A DNA stretch of 64,000 nucleotides from positions 124,001 to 188,000 of the IMG/VR virus record IMGVR_UViG_3300025030_000041. One strand, given 5' to 3'. Both the position numbers and the translations under genes were made by a program. The notes beneath the pieces are model-generated. The model saw only the letters and a list, made by a program, of their open reading frames with translations. It did not search any database and was not told where the DNA came from. Below are positions 26,834 through 56,359 of the stretch, piece after piece. How positions within the stretch are numbered: position 1 is the first letter of the stretch; each line of letters starts with the position of its first letter.

Positions 26834-27525
26834 TTTAATTCGTCTTGATTTAAATCTAGTACTTTATTAAAATTGTCATTTGATATTAACACAACTTTCA
26901 TAGGCTGGTTATTAGTATATTCTAAGTAATTTAATTTTGGGAATGCTATAAATTTAATATCATTATATTCAAACAAAAATGGGGATTCAATTTGTTCTTT
27001 AAATATATCAGATCCTGATGGTAATGTAATACTAGTTTTTTTAGATTTTACCCCTATATTTTTAGCAAAAAACTCTACAATATTTTTATTTGAAGTTTCA
27101 GTAAATATTAATAGACTATTAATATTCGTTTCTAAAGTTTTTAAAAGACTTGGGAATAATGTATTGTTTAAATAAGTAAAATATTGTTGTTCTTTAAGTA
27201 TATTTTCAGCTTGCTTAATTGATTCATCATCTTTAGTGTCATTCGCAGGCTCAGCTTCATTAATGAATGATAAAAAATCTTTAGTATATTGTTCATCTAT
27301 TTTATAAGTAAACCAGTTTGATTTTTCATTTAATTTAATACCAAATAATGATTTATTATTATAATTTATAGTTGAAATATAAAATTTTTTATTATTTGTT
27401 AGTTCTATTAATCTTATAGATTCTTTATTATTTTCTTTTATTAAAGAAATATTTTTTATTCTATTAGGTAAAATATTATTAGAATATAAAAAATTAGAGA
27501 TTATAGTATTTAATTGTCTTTCCAT
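26830..27525 (-). CDS. hypothetical protein
   Basis: 231-aa ORF coupled by ATGA overlap. Confidence 0.6.
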   Translation of the reverse strand: MERQLNTIISNFLYSNNILPNRIKNISLIKENNKESIRLIELTNNKKFYISTINYNNKSLFGIKLNEKSNWFTYKIDEQYTKDFLSFINEAEPANDTKDDESIKQAENILKEQQYFTYLNNTLFPSLLKTLETNINSLLIFTETSNKNIVEFFAKNIGVKSKKTSITLPSGSDIFKEQIESPFLFEYNDIKFIAFPKLNYLEYTNNQPMKVVLISNDNFNKVLDLNQDELK

Positions 27526-27825
27526 TTAATTTAATTTATTTTGAATAAAATATGTTATTTTAATACTACCATCAGCTTGAGTATCTATATCAAATAATTC
27601 AGTATCCCATAGATCTCCTAGGACATCATTCATTAGTTCTATGGTTAAAGTATCTTCTGGAATAACATTATACACATAATTTCCATCTGTAGTTACTCCA
27701 TCATATTCTATATCTCTAGCATGTTCTTTAAAGGTATTCCATAATATTTTTTTAATTTCATCTGGGTGATACTCTTCAAATTCATTAATAAATTCCTCAA
27801 ATATTTTAATGTGTTTCATTTTCAT
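27526..27825 (-). CDS. capsid-targeted small acidic protein
   Basis: MKHIKIFEEFINE. Confidence 0.7.
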   Translation of the reverse strand: MKMKHIKIFEEFINEFEEYHPDEIKKILWNTFKEHARDIEYDGVTTDGNYVYNVIPEDTLTIELMNDVLGDLWDTELFDIDTQADGSIKITYFIQNKLN

Positions 27826-28520
27826 GTATAAACTCCACCTTTTACTTTAACAGCGTTTCTCACTTCTTTTTCTGTAAATACTTTACTATTATAAGTAATA
27901 GTAAAATTTCCACCAACAATAGTAGGAGCTCCTTCTAGACTAATTAACATATTATCAGAACAATGAAAATTTCCAGTAACTGTAGTAGGAGCTCCTTCTA
28001 GACTAATTAACATATTATCAGAACAATGAAAATTTTCATTAACTGTAGTAGGAGCTCCTTCTAGACTAGTTAATTTATTATTAAAACAATAAAAATCTCC
28101 ATTAACTATAATAGGGCTTCCTTCAAGACTAGTTAATTTATTATTAAAACAATAAAAATCTCCATTAACTATAATAGGGCTTCCTTCAAGACTAGTTAGC
28201 TTATTATTAGAACAATTAAAATATCCAGTTACTTCTTCTATACCTAGTGCTCTCAGATCAGTTATTTCTTTTATTCTAACACCACCTATTATTACTTTAA
28301 TATTTTTAAAGTCTTCTATATTATCTTTAGTTATAATAATAGGTTCATTAAATGGTTTAGCAACAAGTATTTGTTCTTTGGTATAACCTTTATTTAGGTA
28401 AGGAATGAGCAAATCATCCCATCTTTCTTTAAGCCTCCTAGGTATAAATATATCTTTAGCGCTAGGCTTAGGAGTTTCTTCTTCAGATATGAATTGTTCA
28501 AAAAGTTTTATATATTTCAT
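27822..28520 (-). CDS. capsid-targeted LRR protein, paralogue 7 (5 repeats)
   Basis: family core; two pairs of near-identical 63-bp repeats. Confidence 0.85.
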   Translation of the reverse strand: MKYIKLFEQFISEEETPKPSAKDIFIPRRLKERWDDLLIPYLNKGYTKEQILVAKPFNEPIIITKDNIEDFKNIKVIIGGVRIKEITDLRALGIEEVTGYFNCSNNKLTSLEGSPIIVNGDFYCFNNKLTSLEGSPIIVNGDFYCFNNKLTSLEGAPTTVNENFHCSDNMLISLEGAPTTVTGNFHCSDNMLISLEGAPTIVGGNFTITYNSKVFTEKEVRNAVKVKGGVYT

Positions 28521-32066: not shown

Positions 32067-32094
32067 AAATAAACGATTGATTATCAATTAATTA

Positions 32095-32169
32095 TATTTA
32101 GTTCAAAAATAAAGTACTTAAAAATTTTAATATATCAAACTTATTTCTTATTTTTGTATTAAATATAAC
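32095..32169 (+). promoter_or_regulatory. gene-less promoter module, copy 1 (upstream GTTA deleted)
   Basis: near-identical to 35873-35950 and 56282-56359; TATTTTTG at 32149 fits the Bacteroidota -7 box TAnnTTTG. Confidence 0.65.
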
Positions 32170-32263
32170 GGTTACAGCCTTATTTAGTGTGGGCAAAATT
32201 TTTGTTTTCTTTTTTCTCCTCACAGTTCGTAGTAATGTTGATACGAAGCACGGTTATTGCATG

Positions 32264-32471
32264 TAACGTTTTCGGGCTTGGAGATAGTTTTTAATGCGAT
32301 TTAAACAACAGAAATATGTTAGAAAAGATACAGAAAAAAGTAGAAGACCTTAGAATAAAGGTATATGCTGGACAGAACAACGAAGACACAGAAAAATACT
32401 TATATGACATTGAGCAAATGATATTCAAAGCGATGGACGAAGCATTAAAGATTTCTTCCAAGCCAGTGTTA
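32264..32471 (+). repeat. attC-like hairpin H1 (208 bp, contains start of ORF 32316)
   Basis: TAAC gttttcg GGCTTGGA ... TCCAAGCC agt GTTA. Confidence 0.75.
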
Positions 32472-32564
32472 GCAGATAGTTGCCAACATAATTGGCTGAA
32501 ATCTCATTCAAGGCATATGCTCTATTGTGGGAGCTGCGGTAAATATAAACCCGAAGGCTCTTAG
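32316..32564 (+). CDS. cassette protein crossing the GTTA junction, CxxxW...CxxC C-terminus
   Basis: junction at KPV|LADS; Zn-ribbon-like CQHNW..CGSCG. Confidence 0.65.
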   Translation: MLEKIQKKVEDLRIKVYAGQNNEDTEKYLYDIEQMIFKAMDEALKISSKPVLADSCQHNWLKSHSRHMLYCGSCGKYKPEGS

Positions 32565-32578
32565 TTGGCAATTTCTGC

Positions 32579-32658
32579 TAACGTTTTGCAGATAAGCGAA
32601 GGCACAAATAGCTTTGGCTTTGTGGGGTGGGATTTGGGCTTTTGCTTATGTGCTGTTA
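32579..32658 (+). repeat. attC-like hairpin H2 (80 bp)
   Basis: TAAC gttttgc AGATAAGCGAAGGC ... GCTTTTGCTTATGT gct GTTA. Confidence 0.85.
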
Positions 32659-32733
32659 TGTGTCTGTAAAATTTTTAATAATTATTTTTTGCGTGGGAAT
32701 TAATCAATTTAATCATTTAATAAAAACAACAAA

Positions 32734-33264
32734 ATGGAAACTTTAAACAAATTATTTACCGAACAAGATGTAGAAAATGTATCAGAAAAAATACTTTCAT
32801 CAACTAAACAAAAAATCAAAGACCAAATTGCTGATACCTTTTACGAAGAAATGTCAGATTGTTTGTTTGAACATTACAACAATTTCAAAGACGGAATGAA
32901 AGCCGATTTGCTAAAGGAAATTACAGACCAATATGTAAGCGACCCTGTAAATTATCAATTTAGAGAATTTAGAAATAAGCTATTTGCAGAGAACAAAGAT
33001 GTAATTCTAAAATCATTGACCGACCAAGCAATTTTTGAAACAGTTGAGAGTATCATTTTAGAATATACTCATAAACAACAAACTTTTGGATGGATGTGGA
33101 ATGAGGCTATCGCAAAAATTGTATTAGCAAATTGGGGTAAATTCAAAGATGATGAAAGAATACAAATGTCATTTGGTAGAGAAATTGATAATTTGAAAGG
33201 ACAAATACAAAGACTGCAAGAACGACTAAATGAAGTTTCATCAATAGTAGACGAAAATCATTAA
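32734..33264 (+). CDS. cassette hypothetical protein (helical, C-terminal coiled coil)
   Basis: 176-aa ORF inside module 32655-33315. Confidence 0.7.
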   Translation: METLNKLFTEQDVENVSEKILSSTKQKIKDQIADTFYEEMSDCLFEHYNNFKDGMKADLLKEITDQYVSDPVNYQFREFRNKLFAENKDVILKSLTDQAIFETVESIILEYTHKQQTFGWMWNEAIAKIVLANWGKFKDDERIQMSFGREIDNLKGQIQRLQERLNEVSSIVDENH

Positions 33265-33311
33265 ATCATTTGTGCGGTGGGAAAAATAATTATTAAAAAT
33301 TTTATTGCACA

Positions 33312-33401
33312 TAACGGTTGGGGGTTTGCGATAGTGCCGCTTACCACAAATTCCAATTTCAGCACTAAACTTCATAGCGGCATTTTGCAAACCCTGTGTT
33401 A
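33312..33401 (+). repeat. attC-like hairpin H3 (90 bp)
   Basis: TAAC ggttgg GGGTTTGCGATAGTGCCGCT ... AGCGGCATTTTGCAAACCC tgt GTTA. Confidence 0.85.
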
Positions 33402-33448
33402 TATGAAGTTTTATTTTTTGAAGGGCGGGCAACAAACAAATTATTAAA

Positions 33449-33718
33449 ATGGAAAAATTAACATCAATCAGATTGCAGCCAATGATTAACATCAATAAAC
33501 CCAATATGGATTTGTGGTGTCCGACATTAAATTTTGGAAGAAAGAAAGCAGGTAAATTCAAATTTCCAATAGTATTTAAAAGTATTAAACCTGCTGAAAA
33601 ACTTTACGATGAACTCCAAAATTTAATTGGCAAATCATTGGACGAAGTGAAAGCTGCATCTGAACCGCTTTATGATAAATACAAGAAGTACGATTATCGG
33701 GTGGGTGGTAAAAAATAA
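33449..33718 (+). CDS. cassette hypothetical protein
   Basis: 89-aa ORF in module 33398-33731. Confidence 0.65.
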   Translation: MEKLTSIRLQPMININKPNMDLWCPTLNFGRKKAGKFKFPIVFKSIKPAEKLYDELQNLIGKSLDEVKAASEPLYDKYKKYDYRVGGKK

Positions 33719-33727
33719 AATTTCCTA

Positions 33728-33841
33728 TAACGGTTTGGTATAAACGCAGTGTTTAACTAAACTTAATTTGAAATACAAAACTTAAAATTATGATAAAGAC
33801 ATTGATTGAAAAACTGGAAACATTACGTTTATACTTTGTTA
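33728..33841 (+). repeat. attC-like hairpin H4 (114 bp, contains start of ORF 33790)
   Basis: TAAC ggtttg GTATAAACGCAGTGTTT ... AAACATTACGTTTATAC ttt GTTA. Confidence 0.85.
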
Positions 33842-33996
33842 GTAAACGCTGTTTTAAAGTAACTTATAAAAGTAAATTGAATGGTAATATAGGAACAATT
33901 GGATATTATGGTAAATCAATTGATGGTGTTAAGAAAAAGTTTCAAAAAGAATTTGAAAATTCAATTATTTTAGACGTTTCTTACAATGTTTACTAA
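33790..33996 (+). CDS. cassette protein crossing the GTTA junction
   Basis: LRLYFV|SKR; stop codon is the TAA of the next TAAC. Confidence 0.65.
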   Translation: MIKTLIEKLETLRLYFVSKRCFKVTYKSKLNGNIGTIGYYGKSIDGVKKKFQKEFENSIILDVSYNVY

Positions 33997-34365
33997 CGTT
34001 ATCGGGCTTGGCGAAGGGCGATTATTAACCGAGAATGTTACTACGAAGAACTAAACAAAAATTTAATAAATAAAAAAAGCGATGGAAATAGATGTAAAAA
34101 AACTGATGCCAGAAGTAACAGATAATCATTTTGAAACGATAGACTTGTTACTTAAAGCAAACCAAGAAATAATTGAAGCATTACATATTATGCAATCCAG
34201 CATTGACAATTGGGATGATGCAGAATGTATGCAAATCAATAAAGACAGAATGATAAAATACTTTAATAGATTTAGTAAGGAGGTGTAGGCTTTTTATTTA
34301 TTAAATTTTTGAACCGAAATGATAATACGAAGCGATAAACTAAGCCTTTTGCCAAGCCTGTGTTA
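33994..34365 (+). repeat. attC-like hairpin H5 (372 bp, encloses ORF 34082-34288)
   Basis: TAAC gttatcg GGCTTGGCGAAGGGC ... GCCTTTTGCCAAGCC tgt GTTA. Confidence 0.8.
34082..34288 (+). CDS. hypothetical protein inside hairpin loop
   Basis: 68-aa ORF with A-rich leader. Confidence 0.6.
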   Translation: MEIDVKKLMPEVTDNHFETIDLLLKANQEIIEALHIMQSSIDNWDDAECMQINKDRMIKYFNRFSKEV

Positions 34366-34404
34366 TAAGGCGAAGCGAACCGTTGGCTTTTCGCCAATGG
34401 CTTA

Positions 34405-34533
34405 TAACGGTTTGCAGGTTTATTCAGTTGCGACTTTAAAAACGAAAAATTATGATAACAGAAAAACAATACTTAAAAGCGAAAAAGTTAATTGCAGACT
34501 ACGAAAGCCAGCAATTGAATAAACATGTTGTTA
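34405..34533 (+). repeat. attC-like hairpin H6 (129 bp, contains start of ORF 34452)
   Basis: TAAC ggtttgc AGGTTTATTCAGTTGC ... GCAATTGAATAAACAT gtt GTTA. Confidence 0.85.
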
Positions 34534-34622
34534 TAAGCAGTAAGCCGACCTCAAAAAAGAAGAAGGTGATTATAGATGCAGATAAATTTTCAAAGATGTG
34601 TGATGTTATTAAACGGATATAG
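34452..34622 (+). CDS. 56-aa cassette protein crossing the GTTA junction (not in ORF track)
   Basis: own translation MITEKQYLKAKKLIADYESQQLNKHVV|ISSKPTSKKKKVIIDADKFSKMCDVIKRI. Confidence 0.6.
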   Translation: MITEKQYLKAKKLIADYESQQLNKHVVISSKPTSKKKKVIIDADKFSKMCDVIKRI

Positions 34623-34634
34623 GCTTATTGCTGC

Positions 34635-34758
34635 TAACGGCTACAAACATGCTTAGTGCCTAATTAAATAGTAATTAACAATCAAAATAGTAGAATTATG
34701 AAAATAGCAAAAATGTTCAAAACTGCACTACAACAGGCATTAAGTATGTTTGTTGTTA
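34635..34758 (+). repeat. attC-like hairpin H7 (124 bp, contains start of ORF 34698)
   Basis: TAAC ggctac AAACATGCTTAGTGCCT ... AGGCATTAAGTATGTTT gtt GTTA. Confidence 0.85.
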
Positions 34759-34958
34759 GCAACCATGTTTACTGGGTTTTCCGTAAATTCAAACGACTTG
34801 AAACAATGGAAACTGCACCTGAAACATGGTTAATTGATGTGGATTTTGCAATCCATTTTGTAGAGCCATTTAAAAGTTATAAAGAGGCAAAGAAAGCAGT
34901 TGACTTTGCAAAACATTTACAACCTTGGCAAGAGTTTGTCATCTTACATGGTTGCTAA
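34698..34958 (+). CDS. cassette protein crossing the GTTA junction
   Basis: ALSMFVV|SNH; stop codon is the TAA of the next TAAT core. Confidence 0.65.
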   Translation: MKIAKMFKTALQQALSMFVVSNHVYWVFRKFKRLETMETAPETWLIDVDFAIHFVEPFKSYKEAKKAVDFAKHLQPWQEFVILHGC

Positions 34959-35045
34959 TGGTTGAGTGTATGAGTAGTGTGGCTTTGCACATACTTTCAA
35001 CTTACAGATAAACTTATTTAGCCACATTACTTATACACTTTGTTA
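34956..35045 (+). repeat. attC-like hairpin H8 (90 bp, TAAT core)
   Basis: TAAT ggttga GTGTATGAGTAGTGTGGCT ... AGCCACATTACTTATACAC ttt GTTA. Confidence 0.85.
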
Positions 35046-35067
35046 TAGGTATGTAAAATTTACGGAT

Positions 35068-35292
35068 ATGAAATTTATAAAAAAACAATTACTTAGAAGT
35101 ATAAACTTTGTTAAACGCTATTGGGAATTTATCGTTGTAGAATTTGCCGAAGATTTGGATTTAACTTGGTTTGGTAAATGGTTTTTAAGAACAATGATGT
35201 TTGGTTTATTTATGTGTTATATTCCAATAGTAATTGTTTTTATGCCACTATGGTTAATTATATTCAAATACGATGAAAGTTTAGGAATGTAG
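35068..35292 (+). CDS. cassette membrane protein (one TM)
   Basis: hydrophobic MMFGLFMCYIPIVIVFMPLWLIIF. Confidence 0.6.
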   Translation: MKFIKKQLLRSINFVKRYWEFIVVEFAEDLDLTWFGKWFLRTMMFGLFMCYIPIVIVFMPLWLIIFKYDESLGM

Positions 35293-35312
35293 GTAGTAAA
35301 TTTTATTACCTA

Positions 35313-35400
35313 TAACATTTAGGTGTATGAGAAGGTTTGCTTAGATGAACTTTCAAATTACCGACAATACTTATAGCAAACTTTCTTATACACCTTGTTA
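35313..35400 (+). repeat. attC-like hairpin H9 (88 bp; second copy at 55317)
   Basis: TAAC atttag GTGTATGAGAAGGTTTGCT ... AGCAAACTTTCTTATACAC ctt GTTA. Confidence 0.85.
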
Positions 35401-35460
35401 TAACCAGTACGATAAAATTAGTAGAAACTTAAATTGAAACATAAATAAAATTTTTTAAAT

Positions 35461-35781
35461 ATGAACGAATACAAATTAAAATTATTGGATTACATCTCAA
35501 AAAATTATGAGAATGTGGTAAAATCAGCACAAGGTGGTGAATATATTGAAATAGATTTAATACCAAACAGCCACGATGGATTACACGATTTACCCGAAAT
35601 TTTGGAATGTTGTGAAAAAAACGGAATTGATGTATATATGTTTTTACGTAGTTATCCAATGGATATTGGTGATGGTATTAGAATGGGAAGATATATGTAT
35701 TATATGCAAAAAACCACCAAGGCAATACTGGATGATTTAAAAAATTTTAACACAGAAACTCAAAACGAAGAACAAAAGTAA
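35461..35781 (+). CDS. cassette hypothetical protein
   Basis: 106-aa ORF in module 35397-35794. Confidence 0.65.
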   Translation: MNEYKLKLLDYISKNYENVVKSAQGGEYIEIDLIPNSHDGLHDLPEILECCEKNGIDVYMFLRSYPMDIGDGIRMGRYMYYMQKTTKAILDDLKNFNTETQNEEQK

Positions 35782-35790
35782 TATTGGTTA

Positions 35791-35876
35791 TAACGTTCTG
35801 TAAATATGATTAGTTGAAGAGTACTGTCATTTATAATTTAGTAGATTGATTATCAATTAATTATATTTACTTGTTA
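35791..35876 (+). repeat. attC-like hairpin H10 (86 bp; copies at 56199 and partial at 32075)
   Basis: TAAC gttct GTAAATATGATTAGTTGA ... TCAATTAATTATATTTAC tt GTTA. Confidence 0.85.
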
Positions 35877-35950
35877 TATTTAGTTCAAAAATAAAGTACT
35901 AAACGTGTTAATATATCAAAAATATTTCTTATTTTTGTATTAAATATAAC
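35873..35950 (+). promoter_or_regulatory. gene-less promoter module, copy 2
   Basis: GTTATATTTAGTTCAAAAATAA...TTATTTTTGTATTAAATATAAC; TAnnTTTG at 35930. Confidence 0.7.
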
Positions 35951-36070
35951 GGTTGAGAATATAAGTAGTAACCGATTTGAAACAAAAATGTTAAATTAAC
36001 GTATAATGATATTAAAAGGTAGTAACTTAAATAAACCACATAACTCGGTTATTACTTATATTCTTTGTTA
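35947..36070 (+). repeat. attC-like hairpin H11 (124 bp)
   Basis: TAAC ggttga GAATATAAGTAGTAACCGA ... TCGGTTATTACTTATATTC ttt GTTA. Confidence 0.85.
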
Positions 36071-36097
36071 TGTGTATGTAAAAATAAATTTATACCA

Positions 36098-36373
36098 ATG
36101 AAAAAAGAAATTAAAATAGGTGACAAGACGTTTGAATTTGAGAGTCCAAACATCTTAGATAAATCAACAACAGATATGATGAATGACTGGTGTAGATTAG
36201 TAGAACAACAAAAGAGTGATGAAGATGTTTGGACGGTGATACCTGAACTACCAGAATACAAATTCAAAAATCTTAAAATAGAGAGTAGTCCGTTTGAAAC
36301 AACAGAAGAAACTACTGAAATGACAGTAACTTTTAAGTATGATGATTTTGAATTTGATGATAAAAACTCATAA
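36098..36373 (+). CDS. cassette acidic hypothetical protein
   Basis: ATG at 36098 in module 36067-36395. Confidence 0.65.
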   Translation: MKKEIKIGDKTFEFESPNILDKSTTDMMNDWCRLVEQQKSDEDVWTVIPELPEYKFKNLKIESSPFETTEETTEMTVTFKYDDFEFDDKNS

Positions 36374-36391
36374 ATTTATTTTTATTACACA

Positions 36392-36474
36392 TAACGGTTG
36401 AGGGTTTATGCAGTTAAATTTTTACCAATAAAAAATAGAAATGAAAAAATTTTATTGCATTAAACCCTGTGTTA
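36392..36474 (+). repeat. attC-like hairpin H12 (83 bp)
   Basis: TAAC ggttga GGGTTTATGCAGTTAAATTTTT ... AAAAATTTTATTGCATTAAACCC tgt GTTA. Confidence 0.85.
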
Positions 36475-36552
36475 GCCGTCTGTATTTTTTAAACATTATT
36501 TTTTTAGGGAGGCATTTAATTAATCAATTTAATCATTAATAAAAACAAAAAA

Positions 36553-37110
36553 ATGGAACAAGTAAAAAAAGCATACGAAGAAATATTCAAAGCGTTAAAG
36601 AAACACAAGGACATTTGCGTTTTTGATGTAGAAGATTTGGAAAGAAAATCAAAAGTTCATCTTTTCGGGCTTACATTAAAAGAGGAATATGGCTTAAACA
36701 TAGACCCGAAGCAAGTTCAGGCGGTAAACTATTTTAAACCATCAGACCATACTTGGATTGGATGGTATGGCGAAAAGCATAATCGAACAATAAGCTGGAG
36801 CGTTGATGGCAGACAGCCCGAAGATGAACTTTTATTGCAAATCGGATTTCCAACAGGGGCTTATATTTTTGGCGAAGATTATGCAACCGATTTCTTTCAA
36901 AAGTTTTGGTTGGAATTGAAAACATACAAGCCCGATTATATTGATGAAGCGAACTGTTGCTTGTATTGGAACATCAAAAACGCAAAAGAGATTTTCAATT
37001 CATATAACGCTTTGCTAAAAAAATATTACGAACTAAATAAAGAGGATGCGAAACAAAGACTAATTGATAAAATGAAAAAGGAATTGGAGCAGTTAGAAAA
37101 ATCATCTTAA
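36553..37110 (+). CDS. cassette hypothetical protein
   Basis: 185-aa ORF in module 36471-37159; ISWSVDGRQP, FPTGAYIFG motifs. Confidence 0.7.
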   Translation: MEQVKKAYEEIFKALKKHKDICVFDVEDLERKSKVHLFGLTLKEEYGLNIDPKQVQAVNYFKPSDHTWIGWYGEKHNRTISWSVDGRQPEDELLLQIGFPTGAYIFGEDYATDFFQKFWLELKTYKPDYIDEANCCLYWNIKNAKEIFNSYNALLKKYYELNKEDAKQRLIDKMKKELEQLEKSS

Positions 37111-37283
37111 TCATTGGAGCGTTGGCAAAAAATAATGTTTAAAAAATATTGCGGCTAACTATTATATATATACAAGTATGCTTAATATATTGAATATGAA
37201 TACTAAATTCGATTGCATTATCAGACAATTTAAAAAAACTCAGATAACCCCTTAATACACATCAAATAAAACAATTTAAACTT

Positions 37284-37484
37284 ATGAAAATTGAAAAAAT
37301 AAAATGTGAAAGATGTGGTGAAATACTAAATCCTAAAACTACTAAATGGCTTGAACTTTCACAAACTGATGGCAATTATTATGACGCCATACCTATTGGT
37401 CATATATCACAAGGAGGATTTAGTTTCGGAACTACATGTGCAATTATACAACTTAAAGAAACTATAAAATGTTTAAAAAATTAA
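37284..37484 (+). CDS. small Zn-binding-like protein
   Basis: CERCGE...W.EL...C. Confidence 0.55.
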   Translation: MKIEKIKCERCGEILNPKTTKWLELSQTDGNYYDAIPIGHISQGGFSFGTTCAIIQLKETIKCLKN

Positions 37485-40647: not shown

Positions 40648-41094
40648 TTAAGTATAGACATCACCTTTTACATCAATTAATTTTCGTACTTCTTCTTCTG
40701 TAAATTTCTTCTTATTATTATTACTAAAAAAATTTCCATTAACTATTTTAGGAGCGCCTTCTAGACTAATTAAGTTATTATAAGAACAACTAAAATATCC
40801 AACTACTTCTTCTATATTTAGCTCTCTTAAATCGTTTATTTCCTTTATTTTAGCATTACCTATTAAAACCGTAATATTCTTAAAATCTTTCATATTATCT
40901 TTAGTTATAATAAAAGTGTCATTAATGGGTTTCACTACAAATATTTGTTCTTTGGTATAACCTTTATTAAGGTAAGGAAGTAATAAGTCATCCCATCTTT
41001 CTTTAAGCCTCCTAGGTATAAATATATCTTTAGCGCTAAGCTTAGGAGTTTCTTCTTCGGATATAAATTGTTCAAATAGTTTTATGTGTTTCAT
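40648..41094 (-). CDS. capsid-targeted LRR protein, paralogue 8 (1 repeat)
   Basis: minimal member with intact N- and C-caps. Confidence 0.85.
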   Translation of the reverse strand: MKHIKLFEQFISEEETPKLSAKDIFIPRRLKERWDDLLLPYLNKGYTKEQIFVVKPINDTFIITKDNMKDFKNITVLIGNAKIKEINDLRELNIEEVVGYFSCSYNNLISLEGAPKIVNGNFFSNNNKKKFTEEEVRKLIDVKGDVYT

Positions 41095-43191
41095 TTATCT
41101 AATCCTGTCAGTTCTAAAAGTTAAATTTTGTATAGTACTATCTATACAAATTATATCAAAAATTGGTTTATATAAAAATAAGGTAGAACCTGCGAAGTCT
41201 GCATCACTAAATATGTCTATTACGTCTATGTAGTTATTTGTAGAATTTGTTAATAATTTAATACTAAACGTGTTTGGAACAATTTCATCATTAAAAATTA
41301 GTCTAAATACTTGGCCGTTTTTCCATTTATTTTTAGAATCGTCTATTATAATTTCAACATCTCCATTTAATACTATTCTAGTACCAGAGTTAACATGTCT
41401 TAAGTAGTTAGTAAATTGTTTTAATTCTATTGTTGTTACATTTATAATATTTACTTCTGGAGAATTTGATAAATTATAATTTTGTACAGTATTAGTTATT
41501 CCAATTTTATTCGGAACATTTTTATCAATTGAAATTCCATCACCGTTTTTTATTGCGTCTATATTATACGAAACTTGGATAGACGTTTTATTATTATAAA
41601 TATTACTAATTTCATCATAATTTTTATTAATTAAACTCATTATAGTTTCGGTATTATCAAATAATGCTTGGTTTGAATTTAATGAATCCTCTATTGTTTT
41701 AAGTCTAGTATCTATTGAAGTAGTCACAGCAGAATCTATTATTAATGATTTTAAATCTGTAATTTCATTTTTTATATTAACAATTTCACTAATATTATCT
41801 CCATAAATTCTAGTTAAATCTTTAAATTGAGTAAGAACATCAGTGTAAAGGTCTAATGAAAATGTAGAATAATCATTAATACTTTTTTCTATAAATACAG
41901 TATCAATAGATGTATCAAATTTAAAATTAGCTTTAAATGCATATGATGTTCCATTAGTATTATTAATAGGGTCTGGCCGATATTTCATTAAAGTTGGAAT
42001 TTTAAAATTAATTCCAGATTGTTCAGGTTTATTTAAAAATAAAATACCATATAAATTAGTAGAAGTATCAGCTGGATTATTTTGATCAAATACATCATAA
42101 TATATTAATACAGCATTAAATTCAAAAGATTTACTTCCAGCGTCATCAGCTAATTGGCTTAAAGATTTAATTGATAAATTTTGTGAAGCTAATGTATAAT
42201 CATTTAATGTAAAATCCAAAGATATACCGTCTAAAGTAGACCTCTTATATTCTACCGTAGTAGATCCTTTTATTTTTCTTATTTTTTCAGTTAATGCACT
42301 ATGAAAATTAGTTATGGAATCAGTAAAATATGAATTATTAGTTTGATTTGGTGAATGCCAATATCTTTCTTCCCATTGAGATAACTGGTAATTATATATT
42401 TCTTGTGTTACACTTCTATCATCAATATCAAAAAATGATTTAATAGATAATCCGTATGGATGAGTATCAAAATAATTTCTTCCAACTAAATATTCAGTAT
42501 TTAATGGATTATCAGGAATATTAGTTAAATTCATTCCAGGTGCATAATTCTCGTCTTCTACTGAATCAAATAATACATAAGGCGTATTACCAACGGAGGT
42601 AGGAGTATGAATATATACCTCAGTATACGCATTTTTAGAATGTTTAACACTATTAACAACATCTATATCTGCAATATATCGTACAACTTTTTTATAATTT
42701 GATGGAGTATTAGTATTACTTAATAGGTGTTCATCTTCTTCAACAAATAAATCTTTAACATTTGTAATTGAATTTTCAAATGGAGTAGCTTTTCTAAATC
42801 GCATAACCCCTAATTCTTTAAGCCATTTCCAAAATACTCTTTCACTTACATTTCTTTTTAATTCTCTATTATAAGCACTCCTACTTGTAATTAAACTTTC
42901 TAAGTTTAAACAATAATTTTGAAATGACTCACTTAAATTAATAGATTGGTCAGTATTTACTCCTTCTATTAATGGGGTTTCTCCTAATACATTAAATTGT
43001 AAAAAATTTTGGTTAGTTTCAGCGTCATTTATTTTACCTATTTCTGGGATACGTAATAATGCAAATTTGCTAAATACAAACTTATTTCCTGTATTATTTG
43101 CAGTAGTCGTTAAGTCTTCAATTGAAGACGGAAATGAATAAAAAATACCCTCGCTGCTTTTTATTGGTTTTATAAATGGAGTTGTTGCCAT
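41095..43191 (-). CDS. large putative virion structural protein
   Basis: 698 aa beside sheath gene; FVFSKFALLRIP, ERVFWKWLKE, AYTEVYIH motifs; coiled-coil segment. Confidence 0.55.
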   Translation of the reverse strand: MATTPFIKPIKSSEGIFYSFPSSIEDLTTTANNTGNKFVFSKFALLRIPEIGKINDAETNQNFLQFNVLGETPLIEGVNTDQSINLSESFQNYCLNLESLITSRSAYNRELKRNVSERVFWKWLKELGVMRFRKATPFENSITNVKDLFVEEDEHLLSNTNTPSNYKKVVRYIADIDVVNSVKHSKNAYTEVYIHTPTSVGNTPYVLFDSVEDENYAPGMNLTNIPDNPLNTEYLVGRNYFDTHPYGLSIKSFFDIDDRSVTQEIYNYQLSQWEERYWHSPNQTNNSYFTDSITNFHSALTEKIRKIKGSTTVEYKRSTLDGISLDFTLNDYTLASQNLSIKSLSQLADDAGSKSFEFNAVLIYYDVFDQNNPADTSTNLYGILFLNKPEQSGINFKIPTLMKYRPDPINNTNGTSYAFKANFKFDTSIDTVFIEKSINDYSTFSLDLYTDVLTQFKDLTRIYGDNISEIVNIKNEITDLKSLIIDSAVTTSIDTRLKTIEDSLNSNQALFDNTETIMSLINKNYDEISNIYNNKTSIQVSYNIDAIKNGDGISIDKNVPNKIGITNTVQNYNLSNSPEVNIINVTTIELKQFTNYLRHVNSGTRIVLNGDVEIIIDDSKNKWKNGQVFRLIFNDEIVPNTFSIKLLTNSTNNYIDVIDIFSDADFAGSTLFLYKPIFDIICIDSTIQNLTFRTDRIR

Positions 43192-43233
43192 TATTTAATA
43201 TTTTTTTAAGATAATTAGAGCTATATGTAGGTA

Positions 43234-43749
43234 TTAATAATTAATAATTCCAGCTTTAGTATCAATTGCATGTTTTATTTCTTTTTGTAAAAACTTTTTG
43301 CCTCTATTTTGGGATATGATAACATCATCTGTAACTAATTTAGGAGCTCCTTCTAGACTAGTTAATGCATTAAAAGTACTAATGAATCTGCCATTTACTA
43401 TTTTAGGACTACCTTTACGATTAGTTAAATTATTGCTAGAACAATTAAAATCTCCAAGCACCTCATCTATATCTATATCCCATTTATTCATATCGCCGTT
43501 TATATAAACTAAACCAACTATAATTTTAATATCTTTAAAATCTTTTACATTATTATCATTTATAATAACTTCATCTCTAAGAGATTTAGCAACTACTATT
43601 TGTTCTTTTGTATAACCTTTATTAAGGTAAGGGATAAGAAGGTCATCCCATCTTTCTTTAAGTCTTCTAGGTATAAATATATTTTTACGACTAAGTTTAG
43701 GTATGTCTTCTTCAGATATAAACTGTTCAAATAATTTAATACGTCTCAT
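43234..43749 (-). CDS. capsid-targeted LRR protein, paralogue 9 (2 repeats, divergent)
   Basis: MRRIKLFEQFISEE plus family core. Confidence 0.8.
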   Translation of the reverse strand: MRRIKLFEQFISEEDIPKLSRKNIFIPRRLKERWDDLLIPYLNKGYTKEQIVVAKSLRDEVIINDNNVKDFKDIKIIVGLVYINGDMNKWDIDIDEVLGDFNCSSNNLTNRKGSPKIVNGRFISTFNALTSLEGAPKLVTDDVIISQNRGKKFLQKEIKHAIDTKAGIINY

Positions 43750-43798
43750 TATTTTTATTTATATAAAAATTAAAAAAAAATATGATTTGCTCCTTGAA

Positions 43799-44296
43799 TT
43801 AAAAATTAAAATCTTTTGCAATTTTAGTTATATTGTTATCTAATTCAGTTAGGTCACACTCTTTAGATTTTAATATATAAAAATCCAAATTAAAAAATTG
43901 TAATGGCTTATGTGTATACTTTAAAGATGACCTGTATTTTTTAACAATTTTATAACAAAACCTATCATAAAAAAGTCTTCTAGTTTTAGATTCGTCTAAT
44001 GCACAAAAAATAAAAGACTCTGGCTGTATTTCTTCTATAAATTGAATGGCTGCTGAATCGATAGTAGGAATAGATAAAAAAGCTTTTTTAGGATCATTTA
44101 ACAACTTAAATTCTCCATTTGCTTTAAACTTAAATAACCAGTGGTTTTGTAAAGTTGAATAGTTTGTGATAGCTATATCATATTTAATATCATCTATTTT
44201 AAATACTCCTATCCATTCGCTTTGCGATTTATTCCAATTTATTAATAACGGATTTTTTAATCCTTCTATAATAAATTTTTGAAAATTTTTAAACAT
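43799..44296 (-). CDS. capsid-targeted protein (intact relative of pseudogene at 2232/3897)
   Basis: MFKNFQKFIIE; RRLFYDRF motif. Confidence 0.65.
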   Translation of the reverse strand: MFKNFQKFIIEGLKNPLLINWNKSQSEWIGVFKIDDIKYDIAITNYSTLQNHWLFKFKANGEFKLLNDPKKAFLSIPTIDSAAIQFIEEIQPESFIFCALDESKTRRLFYDRFCYKIVKKYRSSLKYTHKPLQFFNLDFYILKSKECDLTELDNNITKIAKDFNF

Positions 44297-44993
44297 AAAC
44301 TTCTCCTTTTATATCAATAACATGTCTTACTTCTTTTTCTGTAAATTTCTTTAAATTATTGCTTATATTAAAATCTCCTCTTATTATAGAGGGTGTCCCT
44401 TCAAGGCTAGTTAATCTATTATAAGAACAATCAAAAAAGCCATTAACTATAACGGGACCACCATCTAAACTAGTTAAGATATTATTAGAACAATTAAAGT
44501 TACCTCCTATTGTGGAAAGGCATCCTTCAAGACTAGTTAACTTATTATTAGAGCATGAGAAATTTCCATTAACTGATACAGGACTTCCTTCTAAACTAGT
44601 TAAGTTATTATTAGAACAACTAAAATACCCATTAACTATAGTAGGACCGCCTTCTAAACTAGTTAGTTTATTTAACTTATTTAAGTAACAATCAAAATTT
44701 CCTGATATTTCATCTACCCTTAATACTCTCAAATCATTTATTCCTCGTATTATAGCATTACCTATTATAACTTTAATATTCTTAAAGTCTTTTATATTAT
44801 TTTTAGTTATACTAATAACTTCATTAAAGGGTTTAGTTACAAATATTTGGTCTTTTGTATAACCTTTATTTAGATATGGAATACACAAAGAATCTCGTCT
44901 TTCTTTAAGTGGTATAAATATATCTTTGACACTATAATTATGATTCTTAAATTTATTAGATGCATTACAGTCTAATAGACTATGATATTTCAT
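44289..44993 (-). CDS. LRR protein, paralogue 10 (5 repeats; targeting peptide replaced)
   Basis: family core from KDIFIP onward, unrelated first ~20 aa. Confidence 0.8.
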   Translation of the reverse strand: MKYHSLLDCNASNKFKNHNYSVKDIFIPLKERRDSLCIPYLNKGYTKDQIFVTKPFNEVISITKNNIKDFKNIKVIIGNAIIRGINDLRVLRVDEISGNFDCYLNKLNKLTSLEGGPTIVNGYFSCSNNNLTSLEGSPVSVNGNFSCSNNKLTSLEGCLSTIGGNFNCSNNILTSLDGGPVIVNGFFDCSYNRLTSLEGTPSIIRGDFNISNNLKKFTEKEVRHVIDIKGEVYV

Positions 44994-54423: not shown

Positions 54424-54460
54424 TATATCAAAAACTTTTCTTATATTTGTATTAAATACT
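54424..54460 (+). promoter_or_regulatory. Bacteroidota-type promoter related to the promoter module
   Basis: TATATCAAAAACTTTTCTTATATTTGTATTAAATA; TATATTTG at 54442. Confidence 0.6.
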
Positions 54461-54492
54461 AAGTTTTATTTTTAACCTAAAACCTATATATC

Positions 54493-54906
54493 ATGACATT
54501 AGATGAATCTATAAAAGTACTTGAATTATTTAACAAGTGGAGAAGAGGTGAAGAGATACCTCAAGAAAACCCGACTAAAATTGGAATAGCAATTGATATT
54601 GTTTTAGATGAATTAAAAAAGTTAAGCCACTTTACGCATAATACAGTAGAATGTGATAAAAATAGGATAGGCCCTACTGATTTAATAGACTTAGAAAAAA
54701 ATGATTTAGTTAAATTATTAACAGTTACATTGCCATATTATTCAAAACTAAGTGAATCTGAAAAAGACCTAGTTGCTAAAGGTGGATTATTACCAAATGG
54801 TAGTACTACAGGAGAGCTATATTGGAATTATTGTAAGTTAGTTAGTATGGACCGGCTAGATTTATTTAAATTATATGTTATATGCAAAGACAGTTGGAAG
54901 AGATAA
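54493..54906 (+). CDS. hypothetical phage protein (possibly fused modules)
   Basis: N-terminal FNKWRRG...KIGIAID motif. Confidence 0.65.
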   Translation: MTLDESIKVLELFNKWRRGEEIPQENPTKIGIAIDIVLDELKKLSHFTHNTVECDKNRIGPTDLIDLEKNDLVKLLTVTLPYYSKLSESEKDLVAKGGLLPNGSTTGELYWNYCKLVSMDRLDLFKLYVICKDSWKR

Positions 54907-55046
54907 CCCCAAACTATTGATTATAAAAGAGCAATGACTCATTTTTTAAAAATTAATATTTGCATAGCTTTCATAGATTTTTAAAGTGCAGTCTAAACAT
55001 ATATACATAATAGCCAAAAATTAAATAGACCTAACAAACTTAGAAA

Positions 55047-55309
55047 ATGCAAACGAAAATTTGGATAACATATAAGCCTGATATTGACAAATTTCGGGAA
55101 TGGGATATTATGATGCCAACTCATTGGATAAAACTTCCTGATAATCCGAAAGAGTATTATTTTTTAGTTTATTAATAGAAACAAAAGAAGGAACAATGAA
55201 AGTATGTCGGGATGATTGGATTATCAAAGAACCATTTCAAACAGGCAATATATATATTTATCCTTGTAAAGACGATATTTTTCAAAGTACCTACTACGTC
55301 GTCTTATAA
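55047..55309 (+). pseudogene. two overlapping truncated gene remnants
   Basis: PTHWIKLPDNP (DUF551-like C-terminus) and TKEGTM...DWIIKE...YPCKDDIF.STY, in different frames, both lacking N-termini. Confidence 0.55.
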
Positions 55310-55316
55310 TTGGTAG

Positions 55317-55393
55317 TAATGATTTAGTGTATGAGAAGGATTGCTTAGATGAACTACCAAATTAACTACAGTTGTTGATAGCAAACTTTCTTG
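55317..55393 (+). repeat. truncated copy of hairpin H9
   Basis: GTGTATGAGAAGGATTGCTTAGATGAACT...AGCAAACTTTCTT, with terminal ATACAC..GTTA missing. Confidence 0.75.
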
Positions 55394-55414
55394 TAAAATT
55401 TAACTTTTTGAGCT

Positions 55415-55585
55415 ATGGATAGAATAAGAATTGAAATATTAGAATACAATTATTGGGAGCATTTTAAAGCACTAAAAGATATTGCATTGATTTTACCAAT
55501 TGAACACCCAAAAAGAAAGAAACTTGAAAAAGCTACAAACGAAATATTGAAAGAATTACACGAACTAAAGAGTGGTGGCAGTTAA
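55415..55585 (+). CDS. 56-aa cassette protein (not in ORF track)
   Basis: own translation MDRIRIEILEYNYWEHFKALKDIALILPIEHPKRKKLEKATNEILKELHELKSGGS. Confidence 0.6.
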   Translation: MDRIRIEILEYNYWEHFKALKDIALILPIEHPKRKKLEKATNEILKELHELKSGGS

Positions 55586-55598
55586 ATTTTATTTCTGC

Positions 55599-55722
55599 TA
55601 ACAGTTGGGGGTATATGTAGTGCGAGATTTTAAACACTAAACTTGACTTAACCCCAGAACTTAATTAGAAGTAGAAATGTTGAATAAATCGCTGAACCTC
55701 ACATTACATATACACCTTGTTA
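55599..55722 (+). repeat. attC-like hairpin H13 (124 bp)
   Basis: TAAC agttg GGGGTATATGTAGTGCGAG ... CTCACATTACATATACACC tt GTTA. Confidence 0.85.
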
Positions 55723-55772
55723 TACCCCGTATTTCGTGGGTTGGAAATTATAAACTTAATAAATAAATAAAA

Positions 55773-56003
55773 ATGAAAAATCTAATAGTAGAAAAACCAG
55801 AAGTAAAATTGAATGAAGAAGAAAAAGTAAATTCCTTCATTGAAAACTCAAAAAGTAATGATGGTGTTATCATTAAAATTCAAAATAATGTATATAGACA
55901 TTTAATAGATAAAGATGGTAAATGTTTTATTAAAAATATAACACCTATTTTTGAGTTTGATAGTTACGATGAATTGGAAACGATTTTAAAAACACAAATA
56001 TGA
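55773..56003 (+). CDS. cassette hypothetical protein
   Basis: 76-aa ORF in module 55719-56202. Confidence 0.6.
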   Translation: MKNLIVEKPEVKLNEEEKVNSFIENSKSNDGVIIKIQNNVYRHLIDKDGKCFIKNITPIFEFDSYDELETILKTQI

Positions 56004-56185
56004 TAACATTAATTTATTTAGGTATAGGGTGGTTAATTGGATTTTTAATAATTCAAACTTATCAAAAATTAGGTACTATAATAGTAGATACTAACGTAGA
56101 TAGTTATAGATTGAGAGTTAAATGTTTACTTTCATTTTTAGGTATTATAAATTTAATAGTAGTTCCTATTTTGAGGGTAAGGTAA
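56000..56185 (+). CDS. cassette two-TM membrane protein
   Basis: two hydrophobic segments; ATGA overlap with previous ORF. Confidence 0.55.
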   Translation: MITLIYLGIGWLIGFLIIQTYQKLGTIIVDTNVDSYRLRVKCLLSFLGIINLIVVPILRVR

Positions 56186-56198
56186 AAAATATTGTGTA

Positions 56199-56285
56199 TA
56201 ATGCCCCGTAAATATAATTTAGTTAAAGAGTACTGTCATTTATAATTTAGTAGATTGATTATCAATTAATTATATTTACCTGTTA
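56199..56285 (+). repeat. attC-like hairpin H14 (copy of H10)
   Basis: TAAT gcccc GTAAATATAATTTAGTT ... ATCAATTAATTATATTTAC ct GTTA; loop nearly identical to H10. Confidence 0.85.
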
Positions 56286-56359
56286 TATTTAGTTCAAAAA
56301 TAAAGTACTAAAAATGTTAATATATCAAAAACATTTCTTATTTTTGTATTAAATATAAT
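56282..56359 (+). promoter_or_regulatory. gene-less promoter module, copy 3 (no downstream + strand gene)
   Basis: near-identical to copy 2; TAnnTTTG at 56339. Confidence 0.7.

What the first reader, a model, noticed from the sequence alone, without database searches (positions are those of the whole stretch)
35791..35950. Hairpins appear to travel with the downstream module, placing the crossover at TAAC rather than GTTA
Seen: the H10-type hairpin precedes the same promoter module three times (partial 32075, 35791, 56199). What lies upstream (helicase end, ORF 35461 module, ORF 55773/56000 module) and what follows the module (32166, 35947, 56356) differs each time. In canonical arrays attC belongs to the upstream cassette. 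Inference: the mobile unit is hairpin plus downstream module, i.e. canonical cassettes read on the - strand carrying antisense genes. This agrees independently with the + strand folding bias.
Basis: inference. Interest (0 to 1): 0.72.

Follow-up and report, generated by a model that had tools for sequence, protein, structure and literature searches.

The report
Promoter cassette in phage integron-like array

Summary
The promoter module occurs at least 14-17 times in the 246-kb phage genome, not three times. Only four copies carry the full hairpin: window 35791 and 56199, plus two outside the window. The 32075 copy is a hairpin-less promoter at the start of the array.

Two units recur at 99% identity or more in different contexts, and identity starts and stops exactly at TAAC. 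These are the hairpin plus 56-aa ORF at 34405-34638 (three copies) and the hairpin plus promoter at 35791-35950.

Across about 65 related phage contigs, high-identity breakpoints fall on TAAC in 30 of 50 cases and on GTTA alone in 1.

Each array ends at TAAC, then an AT-rich site, then a tyrosine recombinase gene on the same strand. The window holds a truncated copy at 37196-37255. The cassette next to that site has no hairpin on its 3' side.

Covariation supports the hairpins (17 of 24 pairs). They fold better on the recombinase-sense strand (178 against 2), and all 271 sites found in other phages have that polarity.

The recombinase is Xer/XerA-like and lacks the integron-integrase insert. 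ORFs sit 3' of their sites and point towards the recombinase. This is therefore an integron-like system, not a canonical integron. I found no prior description.

The parts
32075..32165 (+). Resident copy of the promoter module at the distal start of the array. It has no hairpin left arm and carries a 13-nt internal deletion that removes GTTAT.
32166..37159 (+). Cassette array. It holds 11 small + strand ORFs, ten hairpin sites found by the covariance model, and one promoter cassette. It runs from the first TAAC (32166-32169) to the last TAAC (37156-37159).
   Evidence: Model hits lie at 32568-32669, 33301-33412, 33717-33852, 34394-34544, 34624-34769, 34945-35056, 35302-35411, 35780-35887, 35936-36081 and 36381-36485, all on the + strand. 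The ORFs match no Pfam or PHROG family.
34405..34638 (+). Unit X: a TAAC-to-TAAC cassette made of the hairpin left arm, a leader and a 56-aa ORF. The hairpin right arm lies inside the ORF.
   Evidence: There are three copies at 99% identity or more: this one, genome 75298-75531, and genome 234808-234575 (reverse complement), which sits next to the second recombinase gene. Identity starts at TAAC and stops after the next TAAC in all three contexts.
35461..35781 (+). ORF of the upstream cassette (106 aa). It ends 9 nt before the TAAC of the finding.
   Evidence: A 90%-identical copy in another phage (L076 6783-7193) is flanked by different hairpins.
35791..35794 (+). Left TAAC core of the promoter cassette; inferred crossover point.
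   Evidence: Copies A, B and C share no sequence upstream of this TAAC and are 94-99% identical after it.
35790..35877 (+). H10 hairpin site. It has an outer stem TAACG/TGTTA, an asymmetric internal loop, and an inner stem GTAAATAT.../...ATATTTAC.
   Evidence: Folding gives E(+) = -7.0 and E(-) = -5.4 kcal/mol. Model R1 scores it at 42.3 bits, E = 3e-6.
35846..35856 (+). Palindrome TTGATTATCAA inside the conserved module. It may be a regulator binding site; this is inference only.
   Evidence: Conserved in about 13 module copies.
35880..35946 (+). Promoter payload of the cassette. The -7-like box TATTTTTG lies at 35930-35937.
   Evidence: The module faces a downstream ORF or array in every copy except the one at 56359. 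The motif match to the Bacteroidetes TAnnTTTG consensus rests on established knowledge; transcription was not tested.
35947..35950 (+). Right TAAC core. It marks the end of the promoter cassette and the start of the next one.
   Evidence: The right end of homology falls here in essentially all copies (query positions 167-177). A contig from another study's run matches only 35789-35951.
35947..36070 (+). Hairpin site of the next cassette, which carries ORF 36098-36373.
   Evidence: 56.4 bits
37145..37195 (+). attI-like junction: the arm motif AATATTGCGGC, then TAAC (37156-37159), then an AT-rich TATTATATATATAC.
   Evidence: 91% identical to the region upstream of the intact recombinase gene at genome 77290-77392. 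The same TAAC-TAnnATATAT junction occurs in other phages.
37196..37255 (+). Truncated recombinase gene: 19 codons followed by a stop.
   Evidence: Read directly. Homologous to the first codons of the 271-aa recombinase.
54424..56359 (+). Second, smaller array. It has a resident promoter (54424-54458), sites at 55306-55414 and 55588-55733, and small ORFs. It ends in the degenerate promoter cassette at 56199-56359, whose cores both read TAAT.

Best explanation
The window lies in a 246-kb jumbo myophage from groundwater, probably infecting a Bacteroidota host. The phage carries several integron-like gene-capture arrays.

Each cassette starts with a structured site. The site has an outer stem that includes TAAC...GTTA, an asymmetric internal loop, a long inner stem with conserved G.T wobbles, and a variable loop. 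A payload follows, and the cassette ends at the next TAAC.

A Xer/XerA-like tyrosine recombinase is encoded at the downstream end of each array, on the same strand. It is inferred to recombine the sites with each other and with an AT-rich attI-like site just upstream of its own start codon. By analogy with integron attC sites and with CTX phage attP(+), the reactive form is probably the folded recombinase-sense strand. It would be cleaved in the 5' TAAC, so the hairpin stays attached to what lies 3' of it.

The segment 35791-35950 is one such cassette whose payload is a promoter rather than an ORF. Because the cassette ORFs point towards the recombinase gene, no promoter at the recombinase end can drive them. 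Arrays are instead driven by a resident promoter copy at their distal end and by mobile promoter cassettes such as this one.

Shown: the TAAC-to-TAAC units, the site structure and polarity, the recombinase adjacency, and the ORF orientation.

Inferred: that this recombinase does the cutting, that single-stranded folding is required, the exact cleaved bond within TAAC, and that the module is an active promoter.
For: Units bounded by TAAC.
- Unit X occurs three times at 99% identity or more, with unrelated flanks outside TAAC. One copy abuts the start of the second recombinase gene.
- The promoter cassette at 35791-35952 matches genome 76572-76733 at 99.4% from TAAC to TAAC. A third copy sits on the other strand near the second recombinase.
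- In phages L049 and L066, which are 97-100% identical, the same blocks are permuted. Block B abuts the attI-like site in one phage and is internal in the other, and all junctions lie at TAAC.
- Further independent cases come from L014/L046, L018/L060, L009 (internal duplicate), L049/L078 and L042/L043.
- Breakpoint tally: right ends 13 of 23 at TAAC and 1 at GTTA; left ends 17 (plus 3 ambiguous) of 27 at TAAC and none at GTTA alone. Random expectation is 4-9%.

Recombinase.
- The genome has two intact PF00589 genes, at 77341-78156 (+) and 233720-234523 (-). Each lies just downstream of an array and points the same way. A truncated third copy lies at window 37196-37255.
- The catalytic R, K, HxxR, H and Y residues can be read in the sequences.
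- 217 relatives exist in IMG/VR contigs, and hairpins cluster upstream of them.

Site structure.
- 24 consensus pairs, 17 with compensatory changes.
- 178 of 202 hairpins are more stable on the + strand and 2 on the - strand.
- The model finds 33 sites in this genome and 271 in 64 other loci, always with the polarity of the local recombinase and ORFs.
- ORFs in 26 arrays: 270 on + and 7 on -.

Chemistry. [quoted passage not shown] That corresponds to the 5' TAAC of the folded strand here.
Against: - No experiment or read-level junction shows excision. The only read data available were assembled contigs, whose 'joints' mostly reflect the other genomic copies.
- The recombinase lacks the I2 insert that integron integrases are reported to need for single-stranded attC recombination (abstract of PMC7790495, seen).
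- The + strand bias and the G.T wobbles would also be expected for a purely RNA-level structure, because the + strand is the transcribed sense strand.
- At 85-90% identity, some leader-plus-ORF modules are shared between phages behind different hairpins. Many hairpins are shared without their flanks. Linkage across GTTA is therefore not absolute.
- In this cassette the hairpin is weak (-7 kcal/mol), and its right arm is an intrinsic part of the promoter module even in copies that lack the left arm.
- Promoter activity rests on a motif match and on position only.
Confidence: 0.7

Rival explanations
1. PeSL-type shuffling. The hairpins are terminators and the modules are promoters. Units move by ordinary homologous recombination between these repeated regulatory motifs, as in T4-type phages. 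The neighbouring recombinase would be irrelevant.
For: - Composite stem-loop plus promoter motifs that flank small ORFans in hyperplastic regions of a large myophage are what Arbiol et al. describe (PMC2839356).
- The promoter module is highly repeated.
- Some leaders contain -7-like boxes.
Against: - Copies of unit X share only TAAC with their neighbours on either side. That is 4-6 nt of common sequence, too little for homologous exchange.
- Breakpoints pile up at the 5' TAAC and not at the equally conserved 3' GTTA.
- In the loci kept the arrays end at a recombinase gene or a remnant of one, with a conserved TAAC/AT-rich junction.
Confidence: 0.1
2. Site-specific recombination at TAAC takes place on ordinary duplex DNA, at a short core plus the upstream arm motif. 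The hairpins have another role on the transcript, such as 5' UTR control, processing or termination. The + strand bias would then be an RNA signature.
For: - The recombinase is XerA-like over its full length and lacks the I2 insert.
- An arm motif (ATTGCnnATAAC) is conserved upstream of TAAC, and the attI-like site has no hairpin.
- Three hairpins enclose the start codon of their ORF, which suggests translational control.
- The conserved wobbles are G.U in RNA.
Against: - Nearly every crossover core other than the attI-like ones sits at the base of a hairpin whose stems are kept by covariation, and its polarity is strictly tied to the recombinase.
- XerCD is known to use a folded single-stranded site (CTX phage), so the lack of I2 does not exclude a folded substrate. 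This point rests on my own knowledge.
Confidence: 0.15
3. Canonical polarity: each hairpin belongs to the ORF upstream of it and the crossover is at GTTA.
For: - This is the arrangement in all described integrons.
- Stop codons lie 0-50 nt before each TAAC.
- One high-identity right boundary falls at GTTA. It is explained by the next cassette starting with the same repeated short hairpin.
Against: - 1 of 50 breakpoints is at GTTA alone.
- The cassette next to the attI-like site has no hairpin on its 3' side.
- In unit X the right arm lies inside the downstream ORF.
Confidence: 0.03

Closest known systems
Integrons (IntI, attI, attC cassettes)
   Same: - A tyrosine recombinase gene sits next to an insertion site and an array of small, mostly unknown ORFs.
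- The ORFs are separated by imperfect palindromes with AAC/GTT cores, an unpaired spacer and variable loops.
- One strand folds better, and it is the recombinase-sense strand.
- The crossover maps to the AAC at the 5' end of that strand.
- The cassette nearest attI lacks a site on the attI side.
- ORF-less cassettes exist.
   Different: - The recombinase lacks the IntI insert and scores below both integron-integrase cut-offs.
- ORFs are on the folding strand, 3' of their site, and point towards the recombinase gene.
- Expression must come from distal and cassette-borne promoters rather than a Pc at attI.
- Sites carry conserved G.T wobbles. Extrahelical bases were not assessed.
- The host is a lytic-type jumbo phage that carries several arrays.
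CTX-phage-type Xer recombination of a folded single-stranded attP(+) (IMEX elements)
   Same: A Xer-family recombinase would act on a hairpin whose stem mimics a two-arm core site with an unpaired centre, with single-strand exchange. This comparison rests on my own knowledge.
   Different: That system integrates a whole phage genome at the host dif site using host XerCD. Here a phage-encoded enzyme would shuffle many small cassettes within the phage genome.
PeSLs (promoter-early stem-loops) of T4-type phages, PMC2839356 and PMC4122927
   Same: - Repeated promoter plus stem-loop composites flank ORFans in plastic regions of large myophages.
- They mediate modular shuffling, and mini-circles have been reported.
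   Different: PeSL exchange is homologous recombination within the repeated motif, and no dedicated recombinase or attI is involved. Here the junctions reduce to a 4-nt core on one side of the hairpin.
attC clusters (CALINs) reported in phage genomes, PMC9892861
   Same: attC-type sites occur in virulent phages, including a phage of the Bacteroidota genus Polaribacter.
   Different: Those are a few bacterial-type attC sites detected with integron tools, recombined by IntI1, and interpreted as acquired from hosts. No phage-encoded Xer-like recombinase, attI, inverted ORF polarity or promoter cassettes were described.
Archaeal integrons with XerA-like integrases (bioRxiv 10.1101/2022.02.06.479319)
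   Same: The best NCBIfam model for this recombinase is the 'XerA / integron integrase' family, and the best solved structures are XerA.
   Different: I saw only the title and abstract of that paper. The scores here are below that model's cut-off (169-195 against 220 bits).

Membership tests
Integron | IntI-type integrase that carries the additional domain (I2 helix) between the conserved patches | tested here: not met
   TIGR02249 scores 135-171 bits against a 265-bit cut-off, and the match is split in two. PRK15417 scores 79-109 against 435. In the alignment to VchIntIA (2a3v), IntI residues 180-249 face only query residues 180-203. Alignments to XerA are collinear.
Integron | attC-type sites: imperfect palindromes with AAC/GTT cores, an unpaired spacer and a variable terminal loop | tested here: met
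   Covariation supports 17 of 24 pairs. The outer stem is TAACG/TGTTA, the internal loop is asymmetric, and loops give total site lengths of about 50 to 125 nt. Extrahelical bases were not assessed, and IntegronFinder's attC model was not available.
Integron | attI site adjacent to the integrase gene, where cassettes join | tested here: met
   A TAAC plus AT-rich junction lies directly upstream of the recombinase start codon. Closely related phages have different cassettes there.
Integron | Crossover at AA|C of the folded (bottom) strand, so each attC stays with one neighbouring payload | tested here: met
   Breakpoints map to the 5' TAAC at 4-nt resolution. The cleaved bond itself cannot be resolved with these tools.
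Integron | Cassette made of a promoterless ORF followed by its attC, oriented away from intI and expressed from Pc | tested here: not met
   The site lies 5' of the ORF. 270 of 277 ORFs are co-directional with the recombinase gene and point towards it. Promoter modules lie at the distal array ends and inside cassettes.
Integron | Integrase-dependent recombination of the sites | not testable with these tools
   This needs an in vivo or in vitro assay.
PeSL regulatory cassettes | Exchange by homologous recombination within a repeated promoter/terminator motif, with no site-specific enzyme | tested here: not met
   Junctions share only TAAC. They are strongly one-sided relative to the palindrome, and a recombinase is adjacent.
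PeSL regulatory cassettes | Composite of a host-type promoter and a stem-loop, repeated in plastic regions | tested here: inconclusive
   The architecture is present. Promoter and terminator activity were not tested.
Known RNA families (Rfam 15) | Match to a curated covariance model | tested here: not met
   Only one chance-level hit: a miRNA model at 21 bits against a 100-bit threshold.

The most novel reading that the evidence does not exclude
Large phages, probably of Bacteroidota, carry their own integron-like gene-capture platforms. At least 217 IMG/VR contigs encode relatives of this recombinase, and arrays were seen in the sample of loci examined. The platforms are run by an I2-less Xer/XerA-type recombinase that recombines folded sense-strand hairpins at a 5' TAAC. 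Cassette polarity is inverted relative to bacterial integrons, and mobile promoter cassettes replace Pc. If so, single-stranded cassette recombination either arose independently of IntI or predates its I2 insert, and phages would have a dedicated site-specific engine for shuffling accessory genes.
Probability: 0.5. Interest if true: 0.88.

Novelty: new variant of a known kind. Interest (0 to 1): 0.8.

Why it matters
Where the crossover lies defines the mobile unit, and therefore how the whole array should be read. With TAAC as the junction, these arrays become cassettes of [site + payload] stacked in front of a phage-encoded recombinase gene. The 160-nt element of the finding becomes an ORF-less promoter cassette, which solves the expression problem created by genes pointing towards the recombinase.

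Integron-type capture has been regarded as a bacterial (and recently archaeal) trait that phages only occasionally carry as passengers. A phage-borne, widespread variant with a Xer-like enzyme would change three things:
- It would give a concrete mechanism for the 'ORFan' regions of large phages.
- It would offer a natural test of whether the I2 insert is really required for hairpin recombination.
- It would supply compact, portable recombination sites and promoters for Bacteroidota genetics.

Tried and rejected
- Reads. Only Logan contigs were available, not raw reads. Most reported 'joints' (for example 34638 to 35831 and 34639 to 35791) could not be told apart from mapping of the other genomic copies, so I do not count them as excision evidence. 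The useful result was that contigs in the source runs and in another study's run break at 34638 and at 35789/35951.\n- Other phages. Exact-pattern scans of IMG/VR for the H10/promoter module found only fragments of this same genome. These are 100% identical contigs from the same metagenome, so they give no independent copies. L003 is likewise identical.\n- Phage database. blastn of the neighbouring structural genes gave one weak hit to an unannotated uncultured phage.\n- Cassette ORFs. Pfam and PHROGs gave nothing significant.\n- Bacterial relatives of the recombinase (41-48% identity, mostly Bacteroidota) do not have upstream arrays. Some have hairpins of about 124 nt downstream. I did not follow this up.\n- My first, loose endpoint histogram was dominated by redundant copies and hairpin-only matches. 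I replaced it with the de-duplicated tally.\n- One search was a mistyped reference, and searches failed on a wrong ORF start.\n- I considered Mimivirus-type hairpin termination and an RNase III site model early on. I dropped both once the phage identity, the recombinases and the DNA breakpoints were clear.\n- No complex or structure prediction was run.

Full report
**Context**

The window is bases 124001-188000 of a single 246,115-bp IMG/VR virus record. The record has 22-32% G+C. It encodes a weak match, below the Pfam cut-off, to the tail-sheath C-terminal domain, a GyrB-like protein, many 21-aa-repeat proteins, and a protein with a type IX secretion sorting domain. Public runs that hold the sequence are groundwater metagenomes. 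I read it as a jumbo myophage, probably of a Bacteroidota host. The host assignment is inference. It rests on the sorting domain, on the TAnnTTTG-type promoter boxes, and on the recombinase relatives in Bacteroidota genomes.

**The observation**

At 35790-35877 an imperfect palindrome runs from ATAAC to GTTAT. At 35880-35946 there is a conserved module containing TATTTTTG. At 35946-35950 the next ATAAC starts the next hairpin.

The copy at 56199-56359 is 92% identical, but both its cores have mutated to TAAT. The copy at 32075 starts in what would be the loop and lacks 13 nt including GTTAT. It therefore has no hairpin.

There are at least 14 strong copies genome-wide, on both strands, and contig depth over it is about 18-fold. 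Their right ends coincide at the TAAC. Their left ends vary (query positions 1, 12, 30, 38, 48-56, 65, 99).

Only four copies (A-D) have the left arm and the left TAAC. The others directly precede genes or arrays and look like resident promoters. The right arm of this hairpin is part of the module in all copies.

**What surrounds it**

From 32166 to 37159 there are 11 small + strand ORFs. Ten structured sites found by the model and one promoter cassette separate them. The ORFs match no family.

The array ends with TAAC (37156-37159), an AT-rich stretch, and then 19 codons of a tyrosine recombinase gene followed by a stop (37196-37255). This end is 91% identical to the region in front of an intact 271-aa recombinase gene at genome 77341-78156.

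A second intact gene (267 aa) lies at 233720-234523 on the other strand. Both intact genes sit immediately downstream of arrays of the same kind and point the same way.

A covariance model built from hairpins of other phages finds 33 sites in this genome. Their polarity always matches the strand of the local genes and, where a recombinase gene lies nearby, its strand too. The H10 hairpin scores 42.3 bits.

**Is the hairpin a real structure?**

In 58 sites of the roughly 86-nt class, RNAalifold predicts 24 pairs, and 17 of them show compensatory double changes. The outer stem is TAACG/TGTTA with a conserved G.T. There are 3-4 unpaired bases on the 5' side and one on the 3' side. The 19-bp inner stem has two further conserved G.T wobbles, one of them present in 57 of 58 sequences.

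Of 202 distinct hairpins, 178 fold more stably on the recombinase-sense strand and 2 on the other (p about 1e-33). No Rfam family matches.

**Where is the crossover?**

Five lines of evidence agree.

1. Unit X (34405-34638) is a hairpin left arm, a leader and a 56-aa ORF that contains the right arm. It occurs three times at 99% identity or more. The three upstream flanks are unrelated up to TAAC. The three downstream flanks diverge right after the next TAAC. The third copy abuts the start of the second recombinase gene.

2. The promoter cassette itself is 99.4% identical to genome 76572-76733 from TAAC to TAAC, with different flanks. It recurs on the other strand at 235184-235008. In a run from another study, a 360-nt contig matches only 35789-35951.

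3. The recombinase has 217 relatives in IMG/VR (50-64% identity among the 80 kept loci, beside one 100% identical fragment of this same genome). In most of the loci whose upstream sequence is held, hairpins cluster upstream of the gene. In the near-identical phages L049 and L066 the same blocks are permuted. Block B is internal in one phage and joined to the AT-rich site before the recombinase gene in the other. Every junction lies at TAAC.

4. Further independent pairs show the same pattern. In a de-duplicated tally of breakpoints of shared segments (at least 93% identical, at least 150 nt), 13 of 23 right ends and 17 (plus 3 ambiguous) of 27 left ends fall at TAAC. One falls at GTTA alone. 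The random expectation is 4-9%.

5. The cassette next to the attI-like site never has a hairpin on its 3' side. This is what a [site + payload] unit predicts, and it is the opposite of what [payload + site] predicts.

One caveat applies. Where the hairpin family is repeated within an array, a left boundary at TAAC can be only apparent. The cases with unique hairpins (unit X, the promoter cassette) and the attI junctions do not have this problem.

**Geometry compared with integrons**

[quoted passage not shown] That strand is the sense strand of intI, and the array lies 5' of intI on it (my own knowledge).

Here the folding strand, the array position and the crossover all correspond. The ORFs, however, are on the folding strand (270 against 7 in 26 arrays). 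They lie 3' of their sites and point towards the recombinase gene.

The enzyme, though, is not an IntI:
- It is 267-271 aa long.
- It aligns collinearly with archaeal XerA structures.
- It falls below both integron-integrase cut-offs.
- It has about 24 residues where VchIntIA has the 70 that include the extra domain.

**Mechanism proposed**

The recombinase binds the folded sense-strand site, with the outer stem and the inner stem as two arms around an unpaired centre. It exchanges one strand at the 5' TAAC, either with another site or with the attI-like site.

Because the genes face the recombinase, transcription must enter from the far end. Each array indeed begins with a resident promoter copy that ends in ...AAATATAAC. 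Promoter cassettes such as 35791-35950 can re-prime transcription inside an array.

Steps shown and steps inferred are listed under the best explanation. The main rival I cannot exclude is duplex recombination at TAAC, with the hairpins serving the transcript. Three of them enclose start codons.

**Evidence that cuts the other way**

- At 85-90% identity a leader-plus-ORF family is shared by six phages behind different hairpins.
- The ORF 35461 cassette has different hairpins on both sides in L076.
- Many hairpins are shared between phages without their flanks.
- In about 5 of 58 sites the 3' end reads GTTATAAC. This embeds a second TAAC that could separate a hairpin from its payload.

**Novelty**

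Searches of the held literature found the following:
- attC clusters reported in a few phages and attributed to bacterial integrons (PMC9892861);
- PeSLs in T4-type phages;
- archaeal integrons.

They found no description of phage arrays headed by an I2-less Xer-like recombinase with inverted cassette polarity or promoter cassettes. The absence of a hit in this library is not proof of novelty.

Noticed in passing
window 33717-33852, 34394-34544, 34624-34769: Three hairpin sites enclose the start codon of their own ORF (ATG at 33790, 34452 and 34698), and the right arm is coding sequence. This suggests the structure could also gate translation.
   Followed up: partly
alignment A2 (58 sites), columns 26-114, 40-105 and 45-100: G.T (G.U) wobbles are conserved at fixed stem positions, one of them in 57 of 58 sites. 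They account for the strand bias and may act as strand-choice or recognition marks.
   Followed up: partly
window 37196-37255: A truncated recombinase gene (19 codons, then a stop) lies behind an intact-looking attI-like junction. The window's array has lost its own enzyme, but two intact copies exist elsewhere in the genome.
   Followed up: yes
window 56199-56380: The promoter cassette copy here has TAAT at both cores. It is followed by an AT-rich stretch resembling the attI-like site, and then by the 3' end of a convergent gene. It looks like a fossil array end with the recombinase gene deleted.
   Followed up: partly
window 32096-32110 compared with 35865-35890: The 32075 promoter copy lacks 13 nt that lie between two direct repeats of TTATATTTA in the other copies. 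This looks like a slippage deletion that removed GTTAT.
   Followed up: no
window 5922-9856, 17500-20275, 24376-28520, 40648-44993, 62946-63578: There are at least ten paralogous genes made of 63-nt (21-aa) leucine-rich-type repeats (motif ...NxLTSLEGAP...). They share a conserved N-terminus, MKHIKLFEQF.
   Followed up: no
window 52235-54364: A phage-encoded protein carries SprB and PKD repeats and a type IX secretion C-terminal sorting domain. This hints at a Bacteroidota host.
   Followed up: no
L162 10529-13848; L110 11004-16393 (bacterial genomes): Bacterial relatives of the recombinase have TAAC...GTTA hairpins of about 124 nt DOWNSTREAM of the gene. Their larger unpaired spacer is on the 3' side. 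In Flavobacterium saccharophilum each hairpin directly follows a duplicated 311-aa ORF. This may be a bacterial counterpart with the opposite polarity.
   Followed up: partly
genome 13502-13970 (minus strand), outside the window: Two strong sites (94 and 56 bits) lie far from any recombinase gene, so the genome holds more small arrays than the ones described.
   Followed up: no
window 36706-37248: Logan contigs of the two source runs show zero depth here. Short contigs in four runs join 36587 to 37285 with AAATG between. This could be a filter artefact or an alternative form lacking the array end; I could not tell which.
   Followed up: no
window 10098-10171: tRNA-Asn (GTT) gene.
   Followed up: no
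L030 6445-6640 and its counterparts in L032, L039, L047, L059 and L072: A conserved leader of about 180 nt, with its own TATTTTTG box and the first ~25 codons of an ORF (MELRKFIATTIREYLNE), follows different hairpins in six phages. The rest of the ORF diverges.
   Followed up: partly
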